IMG/VR virus record: IMGVR_UViG_3300021511_000003
Coordinates: 159,016 to 223,015 of that record
Length of the DNA: 64,000 bases
Strand: one strand, 5' to 3'
Shown: in pieces, positions 263 through 44,832 of the stretch
Position numbering within the stretch: position 1 is the stretch's first letter
Layout of the letters: every line of letters begins with the position of its first letter
Notes under the pieces: model-generated
What the model was told of the DNA's origin: nothing
Seen by the model: the letters and a program-made list of their open reading frames with translations, nothing else
Databases searched by the model: none
Program-made: the position numbers and the translations under genes

Positions 263-1174
263 TTATTCAGTTATTGTTCTTAATTTATTAATATACATTT
301 CCATTTCATCAAGAACTGAATTGATTGAGATATTCGTTGTAATTGCATTTTTTAAAGAACCATAATGATGCTCGAGACATTGAAGAAGTAAAGATTTGAT
401 TTTATCTTCATCTGGAGAATGTTGTAATGAACTAAATGTATATAATGACTCAAGTTCTTTTTCTTTTATTTTAAAGTATTCAACTAATTGGTCTTGACTC
501 CATTCACCACTTCTAATTGATTTTAACTGTTCTCTATTTCTTTCAAGATCAAGATTATGTTCAGTTAGTATTTGTTCTATTTCATTTAATAAACGAACTA
601 CATGATATGCAAATTTTAAATCATATCCATATTTCTGAATCATATCATATCGTGAACTTCCAGGTTCAGGATTTTTAATTTTCATTTTATGAAGTTGGCT
701 ATAAGCATACCCTTTAAATCTATACCATGCTCCTTTATGAAGAAACAATTTTCGGTTTTCTCTGACTAATTCACCTACAGCAGTAGAATGTAAAATACAC
801 CGTATAGGAACGAAAAGAGAGTCAATCATATTGGGATTATTTTGCATACACAATTGAAAATATTTAACAATTGAATATATAGTAAAATCATATTCTTTTT
901 TAGCACTTATATCATTTACATGGTGTTGTTGCCATTGTTCAAATCTTTTATGTTGTTTTCCAAACCCTTGAATTATTCCATTTAAATTAGGAAATACAAC
1001 ATGTTTTGGTGGAATACAAAATCCATAAATATCCATATCTGATGTATCAGATGAAACACCATAAGCAACAGACCCCATAATTACTTCATATTGTACATTG
1101 TTTTTTAGAAATCCAGGTGGTCGAATTAATTGCCTGGATGTTAGTCTATCAATAATTGATCCCATATATATCAC
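263..1174 (-). CDS. DNA polymerase beta-superfamily nucleotidyltransferase (RlaP/YcgL-like)
   Basis: GSVAYG...SDMDIYG pol-beta signature, NPNMIDSLF, YDLKFAYHVVRLL. Confidence 0.75.
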   Translation of the reverse strand: MIYMGSIIDRLTSRQLIRPPGFLKNNVQYEVIMGSVAYGVSSDTSDMDIYGFCIPPKHVVFPNLNGIIQGFGKQHKRFEQWQQHHVNDISAKKEYDFTIYSIVKYFQLCMQNNPNMIDSLFVPIRCILHSTAVGELVRENRKLFLHKGAWYRFKGYAYSQLHKMKIKNPEPGSSRYDMIQKYGYDLKFAYHVVRLLNEIEQILTEHNLDLERNREQLKSIRSGEWSQDQLVEYFKIKEKELESLYTFSSLQHSPDEDKIKSLLLQCLEHHYGSLKNAITTNISINSVLDEMEMYINKLRTITE

Positions 1175-1198
1175 CTTTTATATCATGACCTATATAAA

Positions 1199-2545
1199 TT
1201 AAATTTTTATTCTCTTTATAATTTTAATAAGGTCTTTTTTATTATTCACTATTGGATTTTCAATCACTGCATCAAGTAATATCTTGAGAATTTTACCAAC
1301 GTTTGGTCCTGGTGGAATATTTATACATTCCATTACATCTTTACCATTAATTGCTAAATCTGTAACATTAAATTCTCCAGATAAGGTTATGTGCCTAGCT
1401 TCATAAATCATCATAACCATTTTTTTCAATTCTGTTTTTGAATAATCAGAAACTCCCAAATTTCCTTTTTTATCAGCTACTTTTAATTTAAACCAATCTT
1501 TCCAATTGACCTTATGTTCAGAAAAGAGTCGTAGCATTCTTCTTACCCCTTTTCTTTTTATATCTTTTGATAAACTTCTCATATGAAATCTTGTTAGATC
1601 ACTTACTCGTTTAATTTCATCTTTACTAAATACATATTTGTTCATCCACTCTTTAACAAGTCTTTGACCAATATCTTCATGATCAACAAAATTTTCTTCG
1701 TTTGATTCTATCCATGCATCAGGTTTGCCAATATCATGAATATATCCTGTTAATCTTAATATAGGATCTTTTGGTGAAATATTATCACCAACTAATTTAA
1801 AATGTGTACATAAAGTTTCATTGTGATATTTACCACCAGGAAACCCATATAGTCTATCAAGTTCAGGAAATATATTTTTTAATAAGCCTGTTTCATGTAA
1901 TACATCGAAAAATATACTTGGTTTTTTGTATGGCATTGCTTTCATAAATTCAAGTCTTATTCTTTCCGGTGAAACTTTTAATATAAGATCGCAATTTTTT
2001 TTAATTGCTAAAAAGGTAGATTGATCTAAGGTTCCTTCAATCAGGCAAGTAAATCTTGCGGCACGGATCATTCTTAAATAGTCTTCATAAATTCGTTGTT
2101 CAGCATTTCCTACAAACCTTATAATTTTATTTTCAAGATCTTTTCTACCGTTGAATTTATCTATCACTTCACCAGTATAAGGACATACTGCCATGGCGTT
2201 AAATGTAAAATCTCTACGCATTAAATCATCATCTAAAGTTTCGCACGCAGTAGTAATACAATTATGACGCCCAGGTTTCATATTTTTATCAGATCTATAT
2301 GTTGAAACCTCAATACTATCTATTAATGTTACAAGAAAGCTTGCTCCTACAAGATCTACTTTACGATCAGGAAAGATATGTGCAAGATCATCGGGGGTTG
2401 CATCTGTAACAATATCATAATCATGAGGATCAAAATCTGCAAATATATCTCGTACTGCTCCTCCAACTAAATACGCACTCCAACCACATTCACATATTCT
2501 TTGAATTAACTTATCACTTAATTCTTCTTCAGTATTGCTTTTCAT
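1199..2545 (-). CDS. cca: CCA tRNA nucleotidyltransferase with HD domain
   Basis: LVGGAVRD, DYDIVT, DLMRRDFTFNAMA, EDYLRMIRAARF, HDIGKP (HD). Confidence 0.9.
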   Translation of the reverse strand: MKSNTEEELSDKLIQRICECGWSAYLVGGAVRDIFADFDPHDYDIVTDATPDDLAHIFPDRKVDLVGASFLVTLIDSIEVSTYRSDKNMKPGRHNCITTACETLDDDLMRRDFTFNAMAVCPYTGEVIDKFNGRKDLENKIIRFVGNAEQRIYEDYLRMIRAARFTCLIEGTLDQSTFLAIKKNCDLILKVSPERIRLEFMKAMPYKKPSIFFDVLHETGLLKNIFPELDRLYGFPGGKYHNETLCTHFKLVGDNISPKDPILRLTGYIHDIGKPDAWIESNEENFVDHEDIGQRLVKEWMNKYVFSKDEIKRVSDLTRFHMRSLSKDIKRKGVRRMLRLFSEHKVNWKDWFKLKVADKKGNLGVSDYSKTELKKMVMMIYEARHITLSGEFNVTDLAINGKDVMECINIPPGPNVGKILKILLDAVIENPIVNNKKDLIKIIKRIKI

Positions 2546-3923: not shown

Positions 3924-3998
3924 TGGAGCGGACAATGAGATTCGAACTCATAATCACCTGCTTGGCAAGCAGGTACTCTACCTTTGAGCTATGCCCGC
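3924..3998 (-). tRNA. tRNA-Gly(GCC)
   Basis: CCTGC-TTGCCAA-GCAGG; GCGGGCA acceptor, U73, CCA. Confidence 0.95.
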
Positions 3999-4605: not shown

Positions 4606-5100
4606 TCAATCCCACCAACTTTCTATATGTTTACTCATTAATTTAAATAAGTATTTAAGATCATTACGTTTTGAGTATTGTTCATGTTTATAAGATGCAT
4701 GAAAATCTTTTTTTTCCTGAATTTTGTCTTTTTCGGTTTTAACATTCGGACGAGTTAGGTGAAGCTGATGCAAGTCAGAATTATTTTTACACACTGTGTA
4801 TGACATTTTAAGTTCACCCCATTTTTTGTCTATATCTTTATATGCCATTATATGATATTCATCTTTGATTAATCGGTCCAGAAGATTAATACATACCTTT
4901 ATTTTATTAGCATCATGTTCTGCATTTAAACTTATTCCTTTATATCGAATAAATTGTTCAGTGAGATGAAGTTTGTGTCGAAGAATTATATAAATATAAT
5001 GATTGTCCCAATTTCTATCTTTCCATATAACAGGAAACCATTTTATTAAATTTTTAATACCATTTTTAAAATTGTATAATAATTCTTTAATTTTCTCCAA
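4606..5100 (-). CDS. hypothetical phage protein
   Basis: 164-aa ORF, WFPVIWKDRNWD...HIESWWD, RBS AAGGAG. Confidence 0.65.
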   Translation of the reverse strand: MEKIKELLYNFKNGIKNLIKWFPVIWKDRNWDNHYIYIILRHKLHLTEQFIRYKGISLNAEHDANKIKVCINLLDRLIKDEYHIMAYKDIDKKWGELKMSYTVCKNNSDLHQLHLTRPNVKTEKDKIQEKKDFHASYKHEQYSKRNDLKYLFKLMSKHIESWWD

Positions 5101-5122
5101 TTTATCTCCTTTTTAAGAGTTT

Positions 5123-5208
5123 TGGAGCGGGCGGCGGGATTCGAACCCGCGATGCATAAATGCGTCAACGTGGAAGGCTGATGGAGTACCGGACTCTCCA
5201 ACGCCCGC
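5123..5208 (-). tRNA. tRNA-Gly(UCC) with 14-nt variable arm
   Basis: TCAGC-CTTCCAC-GTTGA; variable region CGCATTTATGCATC; acceptor GCGGGCG/CGCCCGC, U73, CCA. Confidence 0.9.
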
Positions 5209-5313
5209 TATTTATTATTTGATAAATTATATAATTCTTCCATGATTTTTGGATTATCTATCTATATATTCTTCTGTTGCTTTTAACAGTTCCTTTCATT
5301 TGAAATTAAATGA

Positions 5314-5946
5314 CTAAGTTTTTGGAGTTAGATAAAAATATTTTCGTTCGTTATTATATTTACCCATGAAATATTGTCTTTCATATGTATAATATTTTTT
5401 TGTATGTTTTTTCATGTAATTAATTGTATTCATTGAATGAAAAGATATTATTAATATTGGACAATGTTTTGAAAAATCAAATGTACTGAGTATTTTATCT
5501 TCCCAATTCTCTACATCCATTTTTATTAAATCTGGAAGAGGTAGATTATTTTGTTTAATAAAGTCATAAAGAACAACTGTTTGTACTTCACTTTTATATA
5601 TCCTTGAACGATTATCTGTAGGATATTTTATTGAGTCATCATCCCTTCCTAATAAAAAGTTTTTGTCAAATGATGAACCCCCATCTTTTACAGGTACATT
5701 ATATAATGTTAATTTTTCATTTTTATTACTTACGCCAATATTGAAACTATTAATTTTATTTCCAAATTTACTGACTAATAAATTATATGGATTTGAAGCA
5801 GGATCAAATGCATATATATTGACATTGATTTTTATTAATTGATTGAATAAGTTAATTGTATCTCTATTTGGATATGCACCTAAATCATAATAATTTTTAT
5901 AATTATGAAGTTTACATAACTTAACTATCAACTCTTCTTTTGTCAT
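5314..5946 (-). CDS. FkbM-family SAM-dependent methyltransferase
   Basis: YDLGA (motif I), IYAFDP, PDLIKMDVE; ends in TAG. Confidence 0.7.
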   Translation of the reverse strand: MTKEELIVKLCKLHNYKNYYDLGAYPNRDTINLFNQLIKINVNIYAFDPASNPYNLLVSKFGNKINSFNIGVSNKNEKLTLYNVPVKDGGSSFDKNFLLGRDDDSIKYPTDNRSRIYKSEVQTVVLYDFIKQNNLPLPDLIKMDVENWEDKILSTFDFSKHCPILIISFHSMNTINYMKKHTKKYYTYERQYFMGKYNNERKYFYLTPKT

Positions 5947-6045
5947 ATTTTATATGTCCAGATTTTCAATGTTATTTTGTATAATGGTTCTCCATTAACT
6001 GAAATTGGGATTATTTCTGATATATTCAAATCCTTTATTTTAAAA

Positions 6046-6122
6046 TGGTAGCGACAACTGGAATTGAACCAGTGACCTATGCCTTATCAAGACATTGCTC
6101 TACCCGACTGAGCTATGCCGCT
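6046..6122 (-). tRNA. tRNA-Ile(GAU)
   Basis: ATGTC-TTGATAA-GGCAT; canonical cloverleaf, CCA. Confidence 0.95.
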
Positions 6123-6156
6123 ATTTAATATTTGTTCTAATTATTCTATAATAATG

Positions 6157-6236
6157 TGGCTGACGGGGTGGGAGTCGAACCCACATCTTCTTGGTTAACA
6201 GCCAAGCGCTTCACTGCCATTCTGAGCTACCCGTCA
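6157..6236 (-). tRNA. tRNA-Asn(GUU)
   Basis: CTTGG-CTGTTAA-CCAAG; U1-A72, G73, CCA. Confidence 0.93.
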
Positions 6237-6425
6237 AAAAACATTAATACCATTATCAATATGTTTTGCTTCAATGACCATTTTGATATAATCTTCTTCA
6301 GATTTGACTTTCCAATATTTTACAACATATGGAGAATTAAAATATTCAGGATCCGATTCGACTACAATAAAAGGCTTCCAAATTATTTGACCATTTGTAT
6401 GTAAATAATAATAACCTGGTTTCAT
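6234..6425 (-). CDS. small hypothetical protein (true start MKPGYYYLH)
   Basis: ORF-track upstream extension overlaps a tRNA; ATG at 6425 follows AAGGA. Confidence 0.55.
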   Translation of the reverse strand: MKPGYYYLHTNGQIIWKPFIVVESDPEYFNSPYVVKYWKVKSEEDYIKMVIEAKHIDNGINVF

Positions 6426-6443
6426 AAATATCCTTAAAAATTG

Positions 6444-6520
6444 TGGTAGTCCCGGGAGGACTTGAACCTCTCTTCTTACCGTTATAAGCGATGCGCTCTG
6501 ACCAGTTGAGCTACGGGACC
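6444..6520 (-). tRNA. tRNA-Ile(UAU)
   Basis: Loop CTTATAA, anticodon TAT; acceptor GGTCCCG/CGGGACT, A73, CCA. Confidence 0.88.
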
Positions 6521-6582
6521 ATATACATGATTTAATCATCTATATATATTAACTAATGATTTATATTAAATCATTTTTAAAT

Positions 6583-6658
6583 TGGTGGACCGGAAGGGAC
6601 TCGAACCCTCAACCTTTGCCTTGCAGGGGCATTGCTCACCCAATTGAGCTACCAGCCC
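6583..6658 (-). tRNA. tRNA-Ala(UGC), C33
   Basis: G3:U70 pair; loop CCTGCAA. Confidence 0.9.
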
Positions 6659-6666
6659 ATTATGAA

Positions 6667-6746
6667 TGGCGCCCATGACGGGAATTGAACCCGTAAATTA
6701 AGGTTGACAACCTTACGTAGTTCGCCTAACCTACTACCACATGGGC
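6667..6746 (-). tRNA. tRNA-Asp(GUC)
   Basis: TAAGG-TTGTCAA-CCTTA; GCCCATG/CATGGGC, G73, CCA. Confidence 0.93.
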
Positions 6747-7124
6747 ATTAAAATTTTATCTTTCTACTTTTGATCCAGCCTTTTGCTAACCATGATAAAA
6801 GGTCTATTGATAGAATAATTTTATTTTTTTCCTTTAAATAATATTTATATATCTAAAAAGTTTACATTAAAATGAAATATTTTTTTTCATTGAATAAATT
6901 TTTAATTACCTTCATTACAGGCATATTAATTTCCTCTGATTTCTTTTGTTTATAACATTCGACTATTAATCCTTGACTCAATGCAAATTTTTTTACCTCT
7001 TCAACAGTGAATATTTGCTCATAAGCAAAAATATCATTAATATCAAGTAATTTAAAAAAGTCAATATGATTTGTTAGAAATCTAAAATATCGTATTTTTT
7101 CATAATAAATCCTTTTTCAAAAAA

Positions 7125-7198
7125 TGGCAGGTCAGTGGGATTTGAATCCAACTTCTGGGTTTGGAGTCCAGTATTCTTACCGTTAGAACTACTGACCT
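7125..7198 (-). tRNA. tRNA-Trp(CCA), irregular T arm
   Basis: Loop CTCCAAA; AGGTCAG/CTGACCT, G73; T arm one nt short. Confidence 0.75.
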
Positions 7199-7210
7199 GT
7201 AAATATTTTT

Positions 7211-7289
7211 TGGTGACCCCGACGGGACTCGAACCCGTGTATTGAGGGTGAAGGCCTCATATCCTTATGCCTATTAGGACTACGGGGTC
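7211..7289 (-). tRNA. tRNA-Glu(UUC), C33
   Basis: TGAGG-CCTTCAC-CCTCA; GACCCCG/CGGGGTC, CCA. Confidence 0.9.
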
Positions 7290-7791: not shown

Positions 7792-8105
7792 GTGTATAAT
7801 TCCTTTATATCAAAATAAACTATTTTCGAAGGTCTTTTTTTAAAGACCACTGGACGAAGATCATCCGGATGCCATAAATAAGTTTTTATTATTGCAGCAC
7901 GGACATAATTTTCGGTTGTAATCTTGTCTATTTGATAAGGATGACCAGCCATTTTGCGCATAACAGAATTAACACCAAATAATTCTTTAGTAGTTTCTAT
8001 ATCCTCGTTTATAACAACTGTCATACCAACTTTCATTATATCTGGATGCATTTTTAAAATCCTTTTTATTGGTGGACCAGCTGGGAGTCGAACCCAGTTC
8101 CGCAA
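7788..8105 (-). CDS. hypothetical protein (true start probably downstream of tmRNA 3' end)
   Basis: ORF 5' part overlaps tmRNA end. Confidence 0.45.
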   Translation of the reverse strand: MRNWVRLPAGPPIKRILKMHPDIMKVGMTVVINEDIETTKELFGVNSVMRKMAGHPYQIDKITTENYVRAAIIKTYLWHPDDLRPVVFKKRPSKIVYFDIKELYT

Positions 8106-8455
8106 AAATTCAAATTAAGTATCTACACTCATAGTCAACTTTTAGATTTAGTTACCCCCACGTTCAAACACGGAGTTGACATAACAACGGAGCCAACGGT
8201 GTACATTTGCTGGTAAGTTTGAAAATAAGAATGCCAGTTTGCAGTACCATTGCCCATTCTTATTTCGATCTCTTTACGTCGATGCCCCATCCCAATTCAA
8301 GAGAATAATTGGGTGGAACAGATTAAGCAGCTTTTGCGAAATCGGTGTAATAATCGTCTGCAATTATTGTTAGTGATAATGTTTTTACGGAGTAACATAT
8401 CATTCTCCGGAGTGCAACTTTTTTTTCTTTTCCACGTCGAAACCTTTTCTGGCCC
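8070..8455 (-). ncRNA. ssrA: tmRNA, tag peptide (A)ADDYYTDFAKAA
   Basis: 5' GGGCCAGAAAAGGTTTCGAC; 3' T arm CTGGG-TTCGACT-CCCAG and CTGGTCC-ACCA with G3:U70; tag ORF at 8361-8323 after ATAATT. Confidence 0.93.
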
Positions 8456-8463
8456 ATATAAAT

Positions 8464-9021
8464 TTATAAGTTCAATAATATATTTTTAATAAAGTTTCCA
8501 TCAGATCCTTTAAATCGTTTCATGATTGGACCCATTGCTTGCATTTTATTCTTGAATCTACTCATATCAAGCCCTTTTATATATCTAATAATTTCTTCTT
8601 TATTTACTTGAGCAGGAAGATATTTTTTAGCGATTTTAATATTATGTGATATTAATTTATCGTCCAACTTTTGAATTTTATCTTTGACTATTTTTTTAAC
8701 TTCTGCTGGAGTCTTACCAGATACATCAGCTTCTTTTAAAAATTTTAGCTCATACAATCTTCTTTCTTTTTCTTGATTTATATATTTTTTCAATAACTTG
8801 ATGATATCATCATCGGTAATATCTTTTGATTTTTTTCCAGTTTCAGGGAACATACTTATAATTGCTCTTGAAACTGTTTTTTGTGCAATCATAATGTTAT
8901 ATGCTGTTTTAGTTTCTTTACTGTTAGCCAAAAATACAATAACTCCTTTCTTTCTATATTTTATTTCAATTTCCATTGCGTATTTCAGATCAGCTCTTAT
9001 TCTTTTTAATATTTTACTCAT
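8464..9021 (-). CDS. GatB/YqeY domain protein
   Basis: IRADLKYAM...DDDIIKLLKK...KKYLPAQVNKEEI...MGPIMK matches the YqeY pattern. Confidence 0.75.
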   Translation of the reverse strand: MSKILKRIRADLKYAMEIEIKYRKKGVIVFLANSKETKTAYNIMIAQKTVSRAIISMFPETGKKSKDITDDDIIKLLKKYINQEKERRLYELKFLKEADVSGKTPAEVKKIVKDKIQKLDDKLISHNIKIAKKYLPAQVNKEEIIRYIKGLDMSRFKNKMQAMGPIMKRFKGSDGNFIKNILLNL

Positions 9022-9046: not shown

Positions 9047-9118
9047 TGGCCCAGGTGGGGATCGAACCCACGAATGAGGGTTTTAGAGACCCCTGCTCTA
9101 CCACTAAGCTACTGGGCC
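9047..9118 (-). tRNA. amber suppressor tRNA (anticodon CUA), CCA not encoded
   Basis: GGCCCAG/CTGGGCC acceptor, GCTT/GAGC D stem, GGGGT-CTCTAAA-ACCCT, GTGGG-TTCGATC-CCCAC, A73 then TAC. Confidence 0.9.
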
Positions 9119-13247: not shown

Positions 13248-13335
13248 TGGTAGCGGAGAGGGGATTCGAACCCCTGTTCTTATTACAAGATCTGGCTTAT
13301 GAGACCAGTGAGCTAGACCACTACTCGACTCCGCA
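13248..13335 (-). tRNA. initiator-like tRNA-Met(CAU) with 16-nt variable arm
   Basis: Unpaired 1:72 (U:U), A11:U24, loop CTCATAA; variable region ATCTTGTAATAAGAAC. Confidence 0.85.
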
Positions 13336-17027: not shown

Positions 17028-18194
17028 TTAATTATGTTCTAAGTTAAATACGGTTTTTAAGTAAGAAACGAACTGCTTATTTTCACACATACCTTTACCA
17101 GGGGAATTTGAAATTTTTGCTACAGGTTGACCATTACATTTGGTCATTTTGATTACCATATTGAGAGCAGGATTGGAAAAATTATTTGTTAGTTTTGTTC
17201 CGATACCAAAAGAAACTCCAATATGCATGTTAAGTGCATTGTAAATTTCTTTTGCTTTTTCAAAATCTAATCCATTGCTAAAAACAATGGTTTTTGTCAA
17301 CGGTTCAATTCCTCTATTTTTATAGAATTTAACCATACGAAAACCAAACTGAATAGGGTCAGGTTCGGAATCCTCACGAACACCATCAAATAGTTTATAC
17401 AATAATGGATCGTCAAAATCATGTAAGAAAGCATCTGTATTAATAACATCGGACAATGCTATTCCTAGATCGCCACGATATACTTTTATCCAATTTTCAA
17501 AAGCCATTTTTTGACTGAGATCTAATCTATATTCAAGTTGTTGATGTGCTTGCAACCATTCATGAGCCATAGTACCGATTGGTTTTACATTGTACTTCAT
17601 AGCCAATAATAAATTACTAGTGCCAATAAAATTATTGGTTGCATAGTTTTTACAATATTTTACAACTTTAGAATGCCATCTATAACTTCTTCTTCTTCTG
17701 GTACCAAAGTCTGCAAACTTCAATCCTTCTGGTAAATAATAAAGATTTTCACTCAGTCTCATCTCGGCATCTTTGTAATTGGATATACTAAGATTACAAA
17801 ATATTTCACTAATAATAGACATTAAAGGAACTTCAAAAAGAATAGTTTGAAACCAAGGTCCTTTGATATCAATATTCAGTTCACCAGTATTTGTATTAAT
17901 TGATGTTTTAACTAAATCTGTATTAAATTTATATTGTTTTAAAAACTCAATATATTCTTCACTAAAAAAACGGAGACTTCTTAAATAATCAAGTTCATCT
18001 CTATGAAAATATAGACTGCGTAAGGCATCAATATTAAGTTCAATATCTTGTATTGACTTTTTAAAATTTACACCTTCATAATTTCTACATTTGAATTTAT
18101 ATTCAACTGGAGTTGCTGCATAACCTAATTTTAATACTGCCTGTTGCATAGTAAATTTATACTGGTCATTATCAAGTAAACTATTCTGAATCAT
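17028..18194 (-). CDS. pncB: nicotinate phosphoribosyltransferase
   Basis: True start MIQNSLLDNDQYKFTMQQ; ADFGTRRR, GTSN, GTMAHE, FGIGTKL, KISNSPGK. Confidence 0.92.
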   Translation of the reverse strand: MIQNSLLDNDQYKFTMQQAVLKLGYAATPVEYKFKCRNYEGVNFKKSIQDIELNIDALRSLYFHRDELDYLRSLRFFSEEYIEFLKQYKFNTDLVKTSINTNTGELNIDIKGPWFQTILFEVPLMSIISEIFCNLSISNYKDAEMRLSENLYYLPEGLKFADFGTRRRRSYRWHSKVVKYCKNYATNNFIGTSNLLLAMKYNVKPIGTMAHEWLQAHQQLEYRLDLSQKMAFENWIKVYRGDLGIALSDVINTDAFLHDFDDPLLYKLFDGVREDSEPDPIQFGFRMVKFYKNRGIEPLTKTIVFSNGLDFEKAKEIYNALNMHIGVSFGIGTKLTNNFSNPALNMVIKMTKCNGQPVAKISNSPGKGMCENKQFVSYLKTVFNLEHN

Positions 18195-18566
18195 TGTTTC
18201 TCCTTTGTTATAGTTAAATAAGAAAATATAGAGAATGGATTCTATTCCGGTTCGCCAATTAGCCACCGGGGAAAATCCAGCTGGAAGCCTCAATCGTTTT
18301 GGGAGGCAACGGGTAAATATGTAGCTATTTTGTTAGTGTCACATAACGTTAGTTCATCTTGATATTCTGGTGGAACACCCCATATTAATTACTTAAAAAA
18401 TATAATAACTCTGCTTCATTAATTAATATATATAGATATAATTTTTAAAAATAAGAACATAAAAATGTAGGGTAGGTACAGACTATTTAAGTTTGTTTCC
18501 TTCCATTTATCTTAAACAATCAATTGGTTAAAAAAAATGTTTTGAGTAACAAAATAATAAAAGGAG

Positions 18567-43674: not shown

Positions 43675-44832
43675 TTATCCCTTTATATTTATTAGTGGTT
43701 TGGCATGATCAATTATATTTATAACTATTCCATTTTGTTTTTTGATTACTTCATAGACATTCTTATAAGCGTCAGGTGCTTCATCTATTGTTGACTGATC
43801 GACCTTAGCAACAATACCTTTCATTTGATTTTTGAAAAGTTTCATGTCAATTGTAGATTTGGCTTTCTTTCTACTCATCGTTCGTCCAGCACCATGTGAA
43901 GCTGAATTTAAGTATTTTTCATTACCTAAACCTTCTGTAACATATACACCAGTTTTCATATTACCAGGAATAATTCCAATTTGCCCTTTTTCAGCAGGTG
44001 TTGCACCTTTTCTGTGTAGAACATGCGTCCCTTTTACCTCTGCATGATTATGATTTTCATTAATCATATGATCATGGACTAAAATACTTATTTCGTGCTC
44101 ATTATAACCAAGCAGTAAAAGAATTTCACTTATCATTAATTTTCTATTATCAATAGCGTACTCAAGGGCAAAATTCATATCTTTGAGATATTGCTGCCCT
44201 GATTCACTATTGAGATGAAAGAAACCTTTTGGCAAATCAATATCAATTTTCTTTGAAAGTTTCATATAATAGCTGGCAATCGAATGACCAATATTTCTTG
44301 AACCAGAATGAACAGTTATAGTTAGGTAACCTTTATTATTTTCACCTATTTCAATGAAATGATTGCCGCCACCTAAAGTACCAAGTTGAACATTTAGTTT
44401 ATTATCAACTTTTTTCTGTAGTTCTTTATCTCTAGATGCGCTTTGAAAATCATAATAAACGTATCCATTTTTTCTAGAATTAAACCCAACAGGTATCGTT
44501 TTATAAATATGTTCAAAAAGTTTTATTTTTTCTGATTCTTGTTTAAAGAACTCTTTTGCTTTAATTTTTGTTGCAATATAACACATACCACAACCAATAT
44601 CATATCCTACATATTCAGGAGATATTACATTATCAAGTAATGCTACACCACCAATCGGTAATGTGTAACCTGTATGACAATCAGGCATTACCGCTAATTT
44701 GATTAAAAAGTCAAGTGCAAGGGCTTCATATATTTGTTGTTGTGCAGTCTGTTCTAATTCATGAATAGGAATTAAACTAAAGAGTTTTTCTAATTTTTTA
44801 ACAGGATTTAAATTTTCTGTGTTTTTAGACAT
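43675..44832 (-). CDS. rtcB: RtcB RNA ligase
   Basis: MPDCH, GYDIGCG, LGGGNHFIE, HSGSR, HNH, HRKGAT, HGAGR. Confidence 0.95.
   Translation of the reverse strand: MSKNTENLNPVKKLEKLFSLIPIHELEQTAQQQIYEALALDFLIKLAVMPDCHTGYTLPIGGVALLDNVISPEYVGYDIGCGMCYIATKIKAKEFFKQESEKIKLFEHIYKTIPVGFNSRKNGYVYYDFQSASRDKELQKKVDNKLNVQLGTLGGGNHFIEIGENNKGYLTITVHSGSRNIGHSIASYYMKLSKKIDIDLPKGFFHLNSESGQQYLKDMNFALEYAIDNRKLMISEILLLLGYNEHEISILVHDHMINENHNHAEVKGTHVLHRKGATPAEKGQIGIIPGNMKTGVYVTEGLGNEKYLNSASHGAGRTMSRKKAKSTIDMKLFKNQMKGIVAKVDQSTIDEAPDAYKNVYEVIKKQNGIVINIIDHAKPLINIKG

What the first reader, a model, noticed from the sequence alone, without database searches (positions are those of the whole stretch)
5123..5208. tRNA-Gly(UCC) with a class II variable arm
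Seen: a 14-nt variable region (CGCATTTATGCATC, GCA/TGC stem) on an otherwise perfect Gly tRNA (G1-C72, C2-G71, U73). The neighbouring Gly-GCC tRNA has the normal short loop. Known: bacterial long V arms are restricted to Leu, Ser, Tyr and Sec; nematode nev-tRNAs with Gly anticodons and V arms are leucylated. Inference: either mischarging at GGA codons or structural shielding from host RNases.
Basis: partly seen in the sequence, partly recalled or inferred. Interest (0 to 1): 0.62.

Follow-up and report, generated by a model that had tools for sequence, protein, structure and literature searches.

The report
Phage glycine tRNA with extra arm
A jumbo phage from deep-sea sediment encodes a glycine tRNA with an extra hairpin arm; this design recurs in many phages, is practically absent from cells, seems undescribed, and most likely still carries glycine.

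Summary
Window 5123-5208 (-) is an 86-nt tRNA-Gly(UCC) with an encoded CCA. It has every bacterial glycine identity element and a 14-nt variable region (5151-5164) that folds as C + 3 bp + UUUA + 3 bp + AUC. It lies in the tRNA island of a 223-kb phage record.

It is not a one-off. An IMG/VR pattern scan found about 84 phage tRNA-Gly(UCC) genes with 10-21-nt variable regions (69 unique). Their short stems covary and 30 of 69 loops are GNRA. The same pattern is practically absent from 185,579 species genomes. Cultured jumbo phages (Serratia phage BF and relatives) carry such genes, annotated only as tRNA-Gly.

The arm has the short tRNA-Tyr shape, not the Ser or Leu shape. With U73 and G15-C48, mischarging is unlikely. 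GGA and GGG are 41% of the phage's glycine codons.

The arm's role is untested. My leading inference is a surface change that escapes tRNA-targeting defences or marks the phage's own tRNAs; a tolerated insertion is the main rival. The nearest relative (L272) has a normal loop in the same slot. The long arm is a minority form, at most about 5% of phage Gly(UCC) genes, and was gained or lost about 20 times.

I found no paper describing it.

The parts
5123..5208 (-). tRNA-Gly(UCC), 86 nt with CCA encoded. It has a 7/5 acceptor/T-stem layout, a 4-bp D stem and the extra variable-arm hairpin.
   Evidence: ARAGORN; Rfam tRNA at 51.6 bits; cloverleaf minimum-free-energy fold; identical in independent assemblies.
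5151..5164 (-). Variable region CGCAUUUAUGCAUC: one unpaired C, a 3-bp stem GCA/UGC, a UUUA loop, and three unpaired nucleotides AUC ending in C48.
   Evidence: Sequence. The same layout is seen in L020, L029, L046 and L068. Covariation of this helix is shown.
5172..5174 (-). Anticodon UCC (reads GGA and GGG), in the loop C32-U33-UCC-A37-C38.
3924..3998 (-). tRNA-Gly(GCC) with a normal 4-nt variable loop. It serves as an internal control.
13248..13335 (-). Second class I tRNA in the array with an extra arm: tRNA-Met(CAU), 88 nt, with a 17-nt variable region. Its features look initiator-like (U1xU72 mismatch, A11:U24).
   Evidence: ARAGORN structure; fold; a similar gene in L276.
5314..5946 (-). 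FkbM-family methyltransferase gene directly upstream of the tRNA. Its substrate is unknown.
   Evidence: Pfam PF05050, E = 1.3e-11; phrog_8156.
1199..2545 (-). CCA-adding tRNA nucleotidyltransferase with an HD domain.
   Evidence: Pfam PF01743, PF12627, PF13735 and PF01966; phrog_2244.
263..1174 (-). RlaP-family nucleotidyltransferase of the 'RNA repair pathway' type.
   Evidence: Pfam PF10127, E = 2.9e-21.
43678..44736 (-). RtcB RNA ligase, part of the phage's RNA/tRNA repair context.
   Evidence: the genome search with PF01139: 276 bits at G000:202693-203751, converted to window coordinates.

Best explanation
This is a working phage glycine tRNA that reads GGA and GGG. The host glycyl-tRNA synthetase charges it with glycine, because every known bacterial glycine determinant is intact and none of them lies in the variable region.

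The 14-nt variable region forms a compact hairpin of the bacterial tRNA-Tyr type, which gives a class I tRNA a class II outline. This gene is one member of a recurrent design. Many unrelated large phages carry a tRNA-Gly(UCC), and less often Ile-UAU, Asn, Lys-UUU, Thr-UGU or Met tRNAs, with such a hairpin. The hairpin is kept by selection, and cellular genomes practically lack it.

**Inferred, not shown:** the arm changes the tRNA's surface near the elbow. Host tRNA-targeting effectors that recognise the host's class I tRNA-Gly(UCC) would then bind or cut the phage copy poorly, while the synthetase, EF-Tu and the ribosome still accept it, as they accept natural class II tRNAs.

**Confidence by step:** real expressed-type tRNA gene about 0.9; glycine acceptor about 0.8; arm under selection across phages about 0.85; arm acts as an anti-defence or self-marking surface about 0.35.
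For: **Glycine identity**
- G1-C72, C2-G71, G3-C70, U73, C35, C36 and G10-C25 with a G at the second variable position, checked against the identity review.

**Recurrence**
- 86 IMG/VR contigs match the long-arm pattern, and about 84 are clean cloverleaves.
- My own rough estimate of the chance expectation is about 2.

**Selection on the hairpin**
- Mean best stem is 3.0 bp against 2.62 +/- 0.08 in shuffles, reached by 0 of 1000 shuffles.
- 30 of 69 loops are GNRA.
- All 3 arm pairs change on both sides, and 90.5% of cells are paired.

**Phage specificity**
- 64 hits in 596 Gb of cellular genomes, of which 10 are ARAGORN tRNAs.
- 5 of those 10 match only through masked N runs.
- Three of the other five lie beside several other tRNA genes on MAG contigs (12, 8 and 4 tRNAs in the fetched locus), which I read as probably phage DNA.

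**Isoacceptor specificity**
- Gly-GCC 0 of 50, Val-UAC 0 of 52 and Arg-UCU 0 of 49 carry long arms.

**Retention alongside a normal copy**
- 16 of 81 loci hold both a long-arm and a normal Gly(UCC).

**Co-occurrence**
- Long arms on other class I tRNAs are 2.5-fold more frequent in loci that have a long-arm Gly (p = 0.0018).

**Arm shape**
- It matches the Tyr type, not the Ser or Leu type.

**Cost of mischarging**
- GGA plus GGG make up 41% of glycine codons, and this is the phage's only Gly(UCC).

**Context and precedent**
- CCA-adding enzyme, RlaP and RtcB are encoded in the same phage.
- T5 tRNA-Tyr resists retron-Eco7 through a distinctive variable loop.
- Septu and VapC52 cut variable loops.
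Against: - There is no expression, charging or nuclease data for this or any long-arm Gly tRNA. Only DNA runs were found.
- The nearest relative, L272, has the same tRNA order but a normal 5-nt loop in its Gly(UCC), so the arm is dispensable in this lineage.
- The window's loop is UUUA, not the common GNRA.
- The pattern scan forced the glycine acceptor stem and U73, so the survey cannot show that these co-occur with arms without bias.
- No defence system specific for tRNA-Gly(UCC) is known to me.
- The known variable-loop nucleases attack long arms, so an arm could be a liability as much as a shield.
- Covariation alone would also be expected for a harmless insertion that must not disturb folding.
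Confidence: 0.45

Rival explanations
1. Tolerated insertion. The variable region is the one place where a tRNA accepts extra nucleotides. Fast-evolving phage tRNA genes pick up small palindromic insertions there. Selection only keeps them folded as a tight hairpin so that they do no harm, and the arm has no function of its own.
For: - The arm is missing in the nearest relative.
- The trait was gained or lost about 20 times.
- It is a minority form, at most about 5% of phage Gly(UCC) genes.
- Arm sequences fall into many unrelated families.
- The window's loop is a plain AU-rich UUUA.
Against: - The isoacceptor bias is strong: Gly-UCC and Ile-UAU often have arms, while Gly-GCC (0 of 50), Val-UAC (0 of 52), Arg-UCU (0 of 49) and His (0 of 32) never do.
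- GNRA loops are enriched, 30 of 69.
- 16 of 81 loci keep an armed copy beside a normal copy.
- Arms on different isotypes co-occur in the same phages (p = 0.0018).
- Cellular genomes practically lack the arm.
Confidence: 0.3
2. Handle for the phage's own enzymes. The arm marks phage tRNAs for a phage-encoded tRNA-binding protein, such as a modification, repair or CCA-adding enzyme. Alternatively it exempts them from a phage activity that depletes host tRNAs.
For: - The tRNA sits among a CCA-adding enzyme, an RlaP nucleotidyltransferase, an FkbM-type methyltransferase directly upstream and a YqeY-like protein, and the phage has RtcB.
- GNRA loops, and the conserved AGAUUAG loop of the Ile-UAU arms, look like recognition elements.
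Against: - No protein was shown to co-occur with arms.
- The FkbM methyltransferase has no detectable relatives in IMG/VR.
- Arm loops differ between families, which argues against one shared reader.
- L272 shares the CCA-adding enzyme but not the arm.
Confidence: 0.15
3. Mischarging or recoding. The arm recruits SerRS, LeuRS or TyrRS, so GGA and GGG codons are partly read as another amino acid, as with nematode nev-tRNAs in vitro.
For: - A class II outline on a Gly anticodon resembles nev-tRNA-Gly(CCC).
Against: - U73 is present, not A73 (Leu, Tyr and all 115 nev-tRNAs) or G73 (Ser).
- The Levitt pair is G15-C48, not A15-U48.
- The stem is 3 bp with 3 unpaired nucleotides on the 3' side, against 5-7 bp and 1 nucleotide in phage tRNA-Ser.
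- C35 and C36 differ from the U35 of Tyr.
- The full glycine set is intact.
- 41% of the phage's glycine codons would be affected.
Confidence: 0.04
4. Decaying or non-functional tRNA gene.
For: - The nearest relative has a different, normal gene in this slot.
- Several neighbouring tRNAs in the array look odd: Glu with C33, Phe and Val with acceptor mismatches.
Against: - All stems are perfect apart from one G-U pair in the anticodon stem, and all conserved tertiary nucleotides and the CCA are present.
- It is the phage's only reader of GGA and GGG.
- The same design is conserved with covariation in dozens of phages.
Confidence: 0.05

Closest known systems
Nematode nev-tRNAs (V-arm tRNAs with Gly-CCC or Ile-UAU anticodons; PMC3333845)
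   Same: Both have a class II outline on class I anticodons. The favoured isotypes are strikingly parallel: Gly and Ile-UAU in both cases.
   Different: nev-tRNAs have a tRNA-Leu body with A73 in all 115 genes, and LeuRS charges them. The phage tRNA has a tRNA-Gly body with U73 and G15-C48, and a shorter Tyr-type arm. nev-tRNAs are eukaryotic and confined to nematodes.
Bacterial tRNA-Tyr (class II with a short arm)
   Same: The arm layout is the same: 0-1 unpaired nucleotide, a 3-bp stem, a 3-4-nt loop and about 3 unpaired nucleotides on the 3' side.
   Different: tRNA-Tyr has A73 and anticodon GUA. The Gly arms are not copies of the tRNA-Tyr arm in the same locus.
Phage T5 tRNA-Tyr, which evades retron-Eco7 (PMC11555353, as summarised in PMC13096335)
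   Same: It is a phage tRNA whose altered variable region makes it resistant to a host defence nuclease while it still works in translation.
   Different: That case remodels an arm that already exists on a class II tRNA. Here an arm is added to a class I tRNA, and no matching defence system is known.
tRNA-Gly genes of the ~355-kb jumbo phages Serratia phage BF (genus Eneladusvirus), Yersinia fHe-Yen9-03 and -04 and Erwinia pEa_SNUABM phages, and of Erwinia phage Hallingskeid
   Same: They are the same kind of gene: tRNA-Gly(UCC) of 85-86 nt with a variable region of about 15 nt.
   Different: They belong to a different arm family (AGGCGAAUAG...), have different hosts (Enterobacterales) and share no close sequence relationship with the window's gene. 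They are annotated only as tRNA-Gly.
allo-tRNAs and tRNA-Sec (PMC5389517)
   Same: They are non-canonical tRNAs with long arms and unexpected anticodons, found in metagenomes and phages.
   Different: They have 8/4, 9/3, 8/5 or 9/4 acceptor/T-stem layouts and serine identity. This tRNA has the ordinary 7/5 layout and glycine identity.

Membership tests
Bacterial-type tRNA-Gly (GlyRS substrate) | Discriminator U73 | tested here: met
   The 3' end reads ...CGCCCGC-U-CCA.
Bacterial-type tRNA-Gly (GlyRS substrate) | G1-C72 and C2-G71 (plus G3-C70) | tested here: met
   The acceptor stem is GCGGGCG/CGCCCGC.
Bacterial-type tRNA-Gly (GlyRS substrate) | C35 and C36 | tested here: met
   The anticodon is UCC, in the loop CUUCCAC.
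Bacterial-type tRNA-Gly (GlyRS substrate) | (G10-Y25):G45 triple | tested here: inconclusive
   G10-C25 is present. The second variable nucleotide is G, but it is also predicted to pair within the arm.
Bacterial-type tRNA-Gly (GlyRS substrate) | Is actually charged with glycine | not testable with these tools
   This needs an aminoacylation assay or tRNA charging sequencing.
Class II tRNA (structural class) | Variable region longer than 10 nt that forms a stem-loop | tested here: met
   The region is 14 nt, with a 3-bp stem and a 4-nt loop. The equivalent helix covaries across phage homologues.
tRNA-Ser identity | Long arm plus G73 | tested here: not met
   The tRNA has U73. The arm is 3 bp with 3 unpaired nucleotides on the 3' side, against 5-7 bp and 1 nucleotide in 102 phage tRNA-Ser.
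tRNA-Leu identity (E. coli type) | A73 and the A15-U48 Levitt pair | tested here: not met
   The tRNA has U73 and G15-C48.
tRNA-Tyr identity | A73 and U35 | tested here: not met
   The tRNA has U73 and C35. Only the shape of the arm matches.
nev-tRNA | A73, a tRNA-Leu-like body, leucylation | tested here: not met
   All 115 nev-tRNAs have A73, whereas this tRNA has U73 and a glycine acceptor stem. Leucylation itself cannot be tested here.
allo-tRNA / tRNA-Sec | 12- or 13-bp acceptor branch in an 8/4, 9/3, 8/5 or 9/4 layout | tested here: not met
   The layout is the ordinary 7 + 5.

The most novel reading that the evidence does not exclude
Phages have repeatedly evolved 'armed' class I tRNAs. 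These carry compact variable-arm hairpins, often with GNRA loops, on Gly-UCC, Ile-UAU, Asn, Lys-UUU, Thr-UGU and initiator-like Met tRNAs. The hairpins keep normal decoding but make the phage's tRNAs structurally distinct from the host's. If so, this is a general and so far undescribed layer of the tRNA arms race between phages and bacterial defences, and the window's tRNA-Gly(UCC) and tRNA-Met(CAU) are two instances of it.
Probability: 0.3. Interest if true: 0.8.

Novelty: new variant of a known kind. Interest (0 to 1): 0.62.

Why it matters
Textbook tRNA biology ties long variable arms to Leu, Ser, Tyr (in bacteria) and Sec. Here phages break that rule for glycine and several other amino acids. 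They do so repeatedly and under selection, while cells practically never do.

- **If the arm protects phage tRNAs or marks them as the phage's own,** it adds a new structural strategy to the known ones in the phage-host contest over tRNAs (anticodon-loop changes, overexpression, repair enzymes).
- **If the arm is functionally silent,** it still shows that GlyRS, EF-Tu and the ribosome tolerate a class II outline on tRNA-Gly. That is useful for designing orthogonal or tagged tRNAs.

The trait is present in cultured phages of Serratia, Yersinia and Erwinia, so the question can be tested directly. It also matters for annotation: such genes are labelled plain tRNA-Gly or may be missed.

Tried and rejected
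- **GenBank phages.** A search with the window's tRNA gave only T-arm/acceptor matches of about 30 nt. Two other arm families (L002, L024) gave no match.
- **Relatives through the adjacent FkbM methyltransferase.** None were found in IMG/VR. The CCA-adding enzyme did work as a query.
- **MAFFT alignment.** It did not keep the short hairpins in register. I replaced it with a covariance-model alignment, which leans towards the model's structure.
- **Alternative genetic code.** I rejected this for the genome as a whole. Code 11 gives ORFs up to 1364 aa, and treating TAG as sense adds little.
- **Phage-encoded GlyRS or SerRS.** There is no PF00587 match in the 223 kb, which is about 71% complete.
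- **Expression evidence.** Only DNA runs hold this phage.
- **Promoter and terminator scan.** It is uninformative in DNA with 30% GC.
- **Nearest-neighbour search for the tRNA body.** The best matches are about 80% identical, to long-arm and normal-arm genes alike, so the origin is unresolved.
- **Literature.** Six searches found no description of phage class I tRNAs with long arms. The library lacks most subscription journals, so absence is not proven.

Full report
**1.

ARAGORN and Rfam both place a tRNA at window 5123-5208 on the minus strand. It is 86 nt long with CCA encoded. Read directly, it has these features:
- acceptor stem GCGGGCG/CGCCCGC, giving G1-C72, C2-G71 and G3-C70;
- U8;
- D stem GGAG/CUCC, with a 9-nt D loop holding G18G19;
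- A26;
- anticodon stem UCAGC/GUUGA;
- anticodon loop C-U-UCC-A-C;
- a 14-nt variable region CGCAUUUAUGCAUC (window 5151-5164);
- T arm GCGGG-UUCGAAU-CCCGC;
- discriminator U73.

The minimum-free-energy fold is the cloverleaf plus a GCA/UGC hairpin with a UUUA loop. The nearby tRNA-Gly(GCC) at 3924-3998 has a normal 4-nt variable loop.

A 3-bp stem in 14 nt is not significant by itself, because shuffled variable regions average a 2.6-bp best stem. The abnormal feature is the length of the region. Whether the hairpin is real had to be decided by comparison with other sequences.

**2. Where it sits**

The window is the last 64 kb of a 223-kb IMG/VR virus record with 30% GC, estimated to be 71% complete. 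That makes it a jumbo phage. DNA runs place it in hydrothermal-vent and marine-sediment metagenomes from several studies.

The minus strand between about 2.5 and 17 kb is a tRNA island.
- ARAGORN finds 20 tRNAs there plus a tmRNA. Rfam adds a tRNA-Glu(UUC) and a tRNA-Trp(CCA).
- Interleaved genes encode an RlaP 'RNA repair' nucleotidyltransferase, a CCA-adding enzyme with an HD domain, and a YqeY/GatB-like protein.
- An FkbM-type methyltransferase gene lies directly upstream of tRNA-Gly(UCC).
- An RtcB RNA ligase lies at about 43678-44736.

No class IIa synthetase is present in the available 223 kb. Code 11 fits the genome.

This is the phage's only Gly(UCC). GGA plus GGG are 41% of glycine codons in 134 long ORFs.

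Contigs from three other studies span the tRNA with the arm unchanged. That excludes an assembly artefact. The strains are nearly identical overall, though, so this says nothing about selection.

**3. It is one of many**

I scanned IMG/VR with a degenerate pattern: acceptor GCGGG/CCCGC-U, loop YUUCCR, a variable region of at least 10 nt, and T loop GUUCRA.
- The scan returned 86 contigs. My own rough estimate of the chance expectation is about 2.
- About 84 of the 86 are clean tRNA-Gly(UCC) cloverleaves with variable regions of 10-21 nt, and 69 are unique.
- They fall into several arm families. The commonest layout is C/A + 2-4 bp + tetraloop + 2-4 unpaired nucleotides ending in a pyrimidine.
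- 30 of 69 loops are GNRA.
- Mean best stem is 3.0 bp against 2.62 +/- 0.08 in shuffles, reached by 0 of 1000 shuffles.
- Stems differ by compensatory changes: GCA/UGC, GUC/GAC, GAC/GUC, GGA/UCC, UCC/GGA, GGC/GCC.

I then built a covariance model from the five sequences that share the window's exact layout and used it to realign the tRNAs. On that alignment, all three arm pairs show changes on both sides and 90.5% of cells are paired. This is comparable to the canonical stems. The caveat is that the alignment was fitted to the model's structure.

The window's arm is closest to those of L029 (CGCAGAAAUGCAUU) and L020 (CGCAGAUAUGCACU).

**4. It is a phage trait**

The same pattern, run over one genome for each of 185,579 prokaryote species (596 Gb), gave 64 hits.
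- Only 10 are ARAGORN tRNAs.
- 5 of those 10 match only through masked N runs.
- Three of the other five lie beside several other tRNA genes on MAG contigs: 12 tRNAs in 8 kb, 8 in 3.3 kb, and 4 in the 8-kb locus. I read these as probably phage DNA.

The pattern does capture ordinary Gly(UCC) genes: the normal-arm version saturates the scan in IMG/VR. From my own knowledge, it also fits E. coli glyT.

Using the window's exact acceptor stem, there are at least 120 normal-arm contigs against 4 long-arm ones. Long arms are therefore at most about 3-5% of phage Gly(UCC) genes.

Cultured jumbo phages carry one arm family:
- Serratia phage BF (KY630187, 306704-306788);
- Yersinia phages fHe-Yen9-03 and -04;
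- six Erwinia pEa_SNUABM phages;
- Erwinia phage Hallingskeid.

In the two records I fetched (BF and Hallingskeid), the genes are 85-86 nt and are annotated simply as tRNA-Gly. The Erwinia jumbo-phage paper that compares these genomes does not comment on them.

**5. Specificity and evolution**

Arm frequency differs sharply by isotype in the phage loci I fetched.

| Isotype | Long arm / total |
|---|---|
| Ile-UAU | 11 / 20 |
| Asn-GUU | 7 / 46 |
| Lys-UUU | 5 / 42 |
| Thr-UGU | 8 / 74 |
| Met-CAU | 5 / 94 |
| Pro-UGG | 3 / 62 |
| Gly-GCC | 0 / 50 |
| Val-UAC | 0 / 52 |
| Arg-UCU | 0 / 49 |
| His-GUG | 0 / 32 |

- Long arms on other class I tRNAs are 2.5 times more frequent in loci chosen for a long-arm Gly than in loci chosen for a normal Gly (36 of 476 against 17 of 536; p = 0.0018).
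- The window itself shows this co-occurrence. Its tRNA-Met(CAU) at 13248-13335 has a 17-nt arm.
- On a tree of 196 unique Gly(UCC) bodies with the variable region removed, the trait needs about 20 changes, against 52-63 for shuffled labels. So it is inherited within lineages but was gained or lost many times. The alignment is short, so the tree is weak.
- 16 of 81 loci hold both a long-arm and a normal Gly(UCC).

In the window's own lineage the arm is not conserved. L272 has a CCA-adding enzyme 61% identical to the window's and the same tRNA gene order. Its Gly(UCC) in the same slot has a normal 5-nt loop and a different D arm, and is 65% identical once the arm is removed.

**6. Which amino acid?**

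According to the identity review:
- bacterial glycine identity is U73, G1-C72, C2-G71, C35 and C36, with the (G10-Y25):G45 triple conserved; all are present here;
- E. coli leucine identity needs A73 and A15-U48; this tRNA has U73 and G15-C48;
- serine identity rests on a long arm plus G73; this tRNA has U73 and a 3-bp arm;
- tyrosine identity needs A73 and U35; this tRNA has neither.

In the same phage loci, genuine tRNA-Ser arms are 5-7 bp with 1 unpaired nucleotide on the 3' side, and tRNA-Leu arms are 3-5 bp with 1. tRNA-Tyr arms are 3 bp with about 3 unpaired nucleotides. The Gly arms match the Tyr shape.

nev-tRNAs are leucylated because they carry A73, found in all 115 genes, on a tRNA-Leu body. 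The phage tRNA fails that test.

Mischarging would hit 41% of glycine codons. I therefore put glycine acceptance at about 0.8 and recoding at about 0.04.

**7. What is the arm for?**

Nothing here tests this directly.

Points in favour of a function:
- the isoacceptor bias;
- the GNRA enrichment;
- retention beside normal copies;
- co-occurrence across isotypes;
- restriction to phages.

The best-supported analogy is defence evasion.
- T5's tRNA-Tyr is reported to be resistant through a distinctive variable loop.
- VapC52 cuts a variable loop.
- This phage carries an RNA-repair kit.

Points against:
- no nuclease specific for tRNA-Gly(UCC) is known to me;
- the arm is dispensable in L272;
- pairing could be kept simply to make an insertion harmless.

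I rank the readings as follows: a surface change for defence evasion about 0.35; a tolerated insertion about 0.30; a handle for phage enzymes about 0.15.

**8. Novelty**

Six full-text searches found no description of phage class I tRNAs with long arms. A review of non-canonical tRNAs does not mention phages or tRNA-Gly. The library omits most subscription journals, so prior description cannot be ruled out.

I classify this as a new variant of a known kind: an ordinary glycine tRNA with a class II outline, belonging to a recurrent phage-specific design.

Noticed in passing
window 13248-13335 (-): tRNA-Met(CAU), 88 nt, also carries an extra arm (a 17-nt variable region). It looks initiator-like, with a U1xU72 mismatch, A11:U24 and G29-C41/G30-C40. 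It is the only CAU tRNA in the record. A similar gene with an 18-nt arm is at L276:5547-5634.
   Followed up: partly
L010:8593-8686, L094:4469-4560, L167:3913-4002, L169:4919-5010, L175:7704-7797, L193:3868-3961 and others: 11 of 20 unique phage tRNA-Ile(UAU) genes have arms of 21-25 nt. The loop carries a conserved AGAUUAG/AGAUAG motif on otherwise different bodies. Most have A73. This is the same isotype as the nematode nev-tRNA-Ile(UAU). The conserved loop suggests a specific reader.
   Followed up: partly
window 9047-9118 (-): A tRNA with a CUA anticodon (amber suppressor type; ARAGORN labels it 'Pyl'). It is also present at the matching position in L272 (2798-2875). The genome otherwise fits code 11. 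Among 134 long ORFs, 13 end in TAG, 100 in TAA and 21 in TGA.
   Followed up: partly
window 8070-8455 (-): A phage-encoded tmRNA (Rfam 137.8 bits) with tag peptide ADDYYTDFAKAA, sitting inside the tRNA island.
   Followed up: no
window 7214-7289 (-) and 7128-7198 (-): Two tRNA genes found only by Rfam. One is a tRNA-Glu(UUC) whose anticodon loop reads CCUUCAC, so it has C33 instead of the universal U33. The other is a tRNA-Trp(CCA) with an imperfect T stem.
   Followed up: partly
window 263-2545 (-), 8464-9021 (-), 17028-18293 (-), ~43678-44736 (-): A tRNA maintenance and repair gene set: RlaP nucleotidyltransferase, CCA-adding enzyme with an HD domain, a YqeY/GatB-like protein and an RtcB ligase. 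There is also a nicotinate phosphoribosyltransferase.
   Followed up: partly
window 6830-7028 and 4952-6894: In other metagenomes, the main strain (X2, X4) lacks 199 bp at 6830-7028, which is replaced by CCTTT. Low-depth contigs in three runs join 4951 to 6895 with 11 other letters between. That would skip tRNA-Gly(UCC), the methyltransferase and five more tRNAs. This may be a related phage rather than a variant of this one.
   Followed up: no
window 6157-6236 (-): tRNA-Asn(GUU) of 80 nt with an unusual D arm (a 2-bp stem as drawn by ARAGORN, with a long loop). Several other tRNAs in the array (Phe, Val, Asp) have mismatches in the acceptor stem.
   Followed up: no
phage loci L002-L207: 30 of 102 unique phage tRNA-Ser genes have a discriminator that is U (20) or A (10) instead of the canonical G73.
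   Followed up: no
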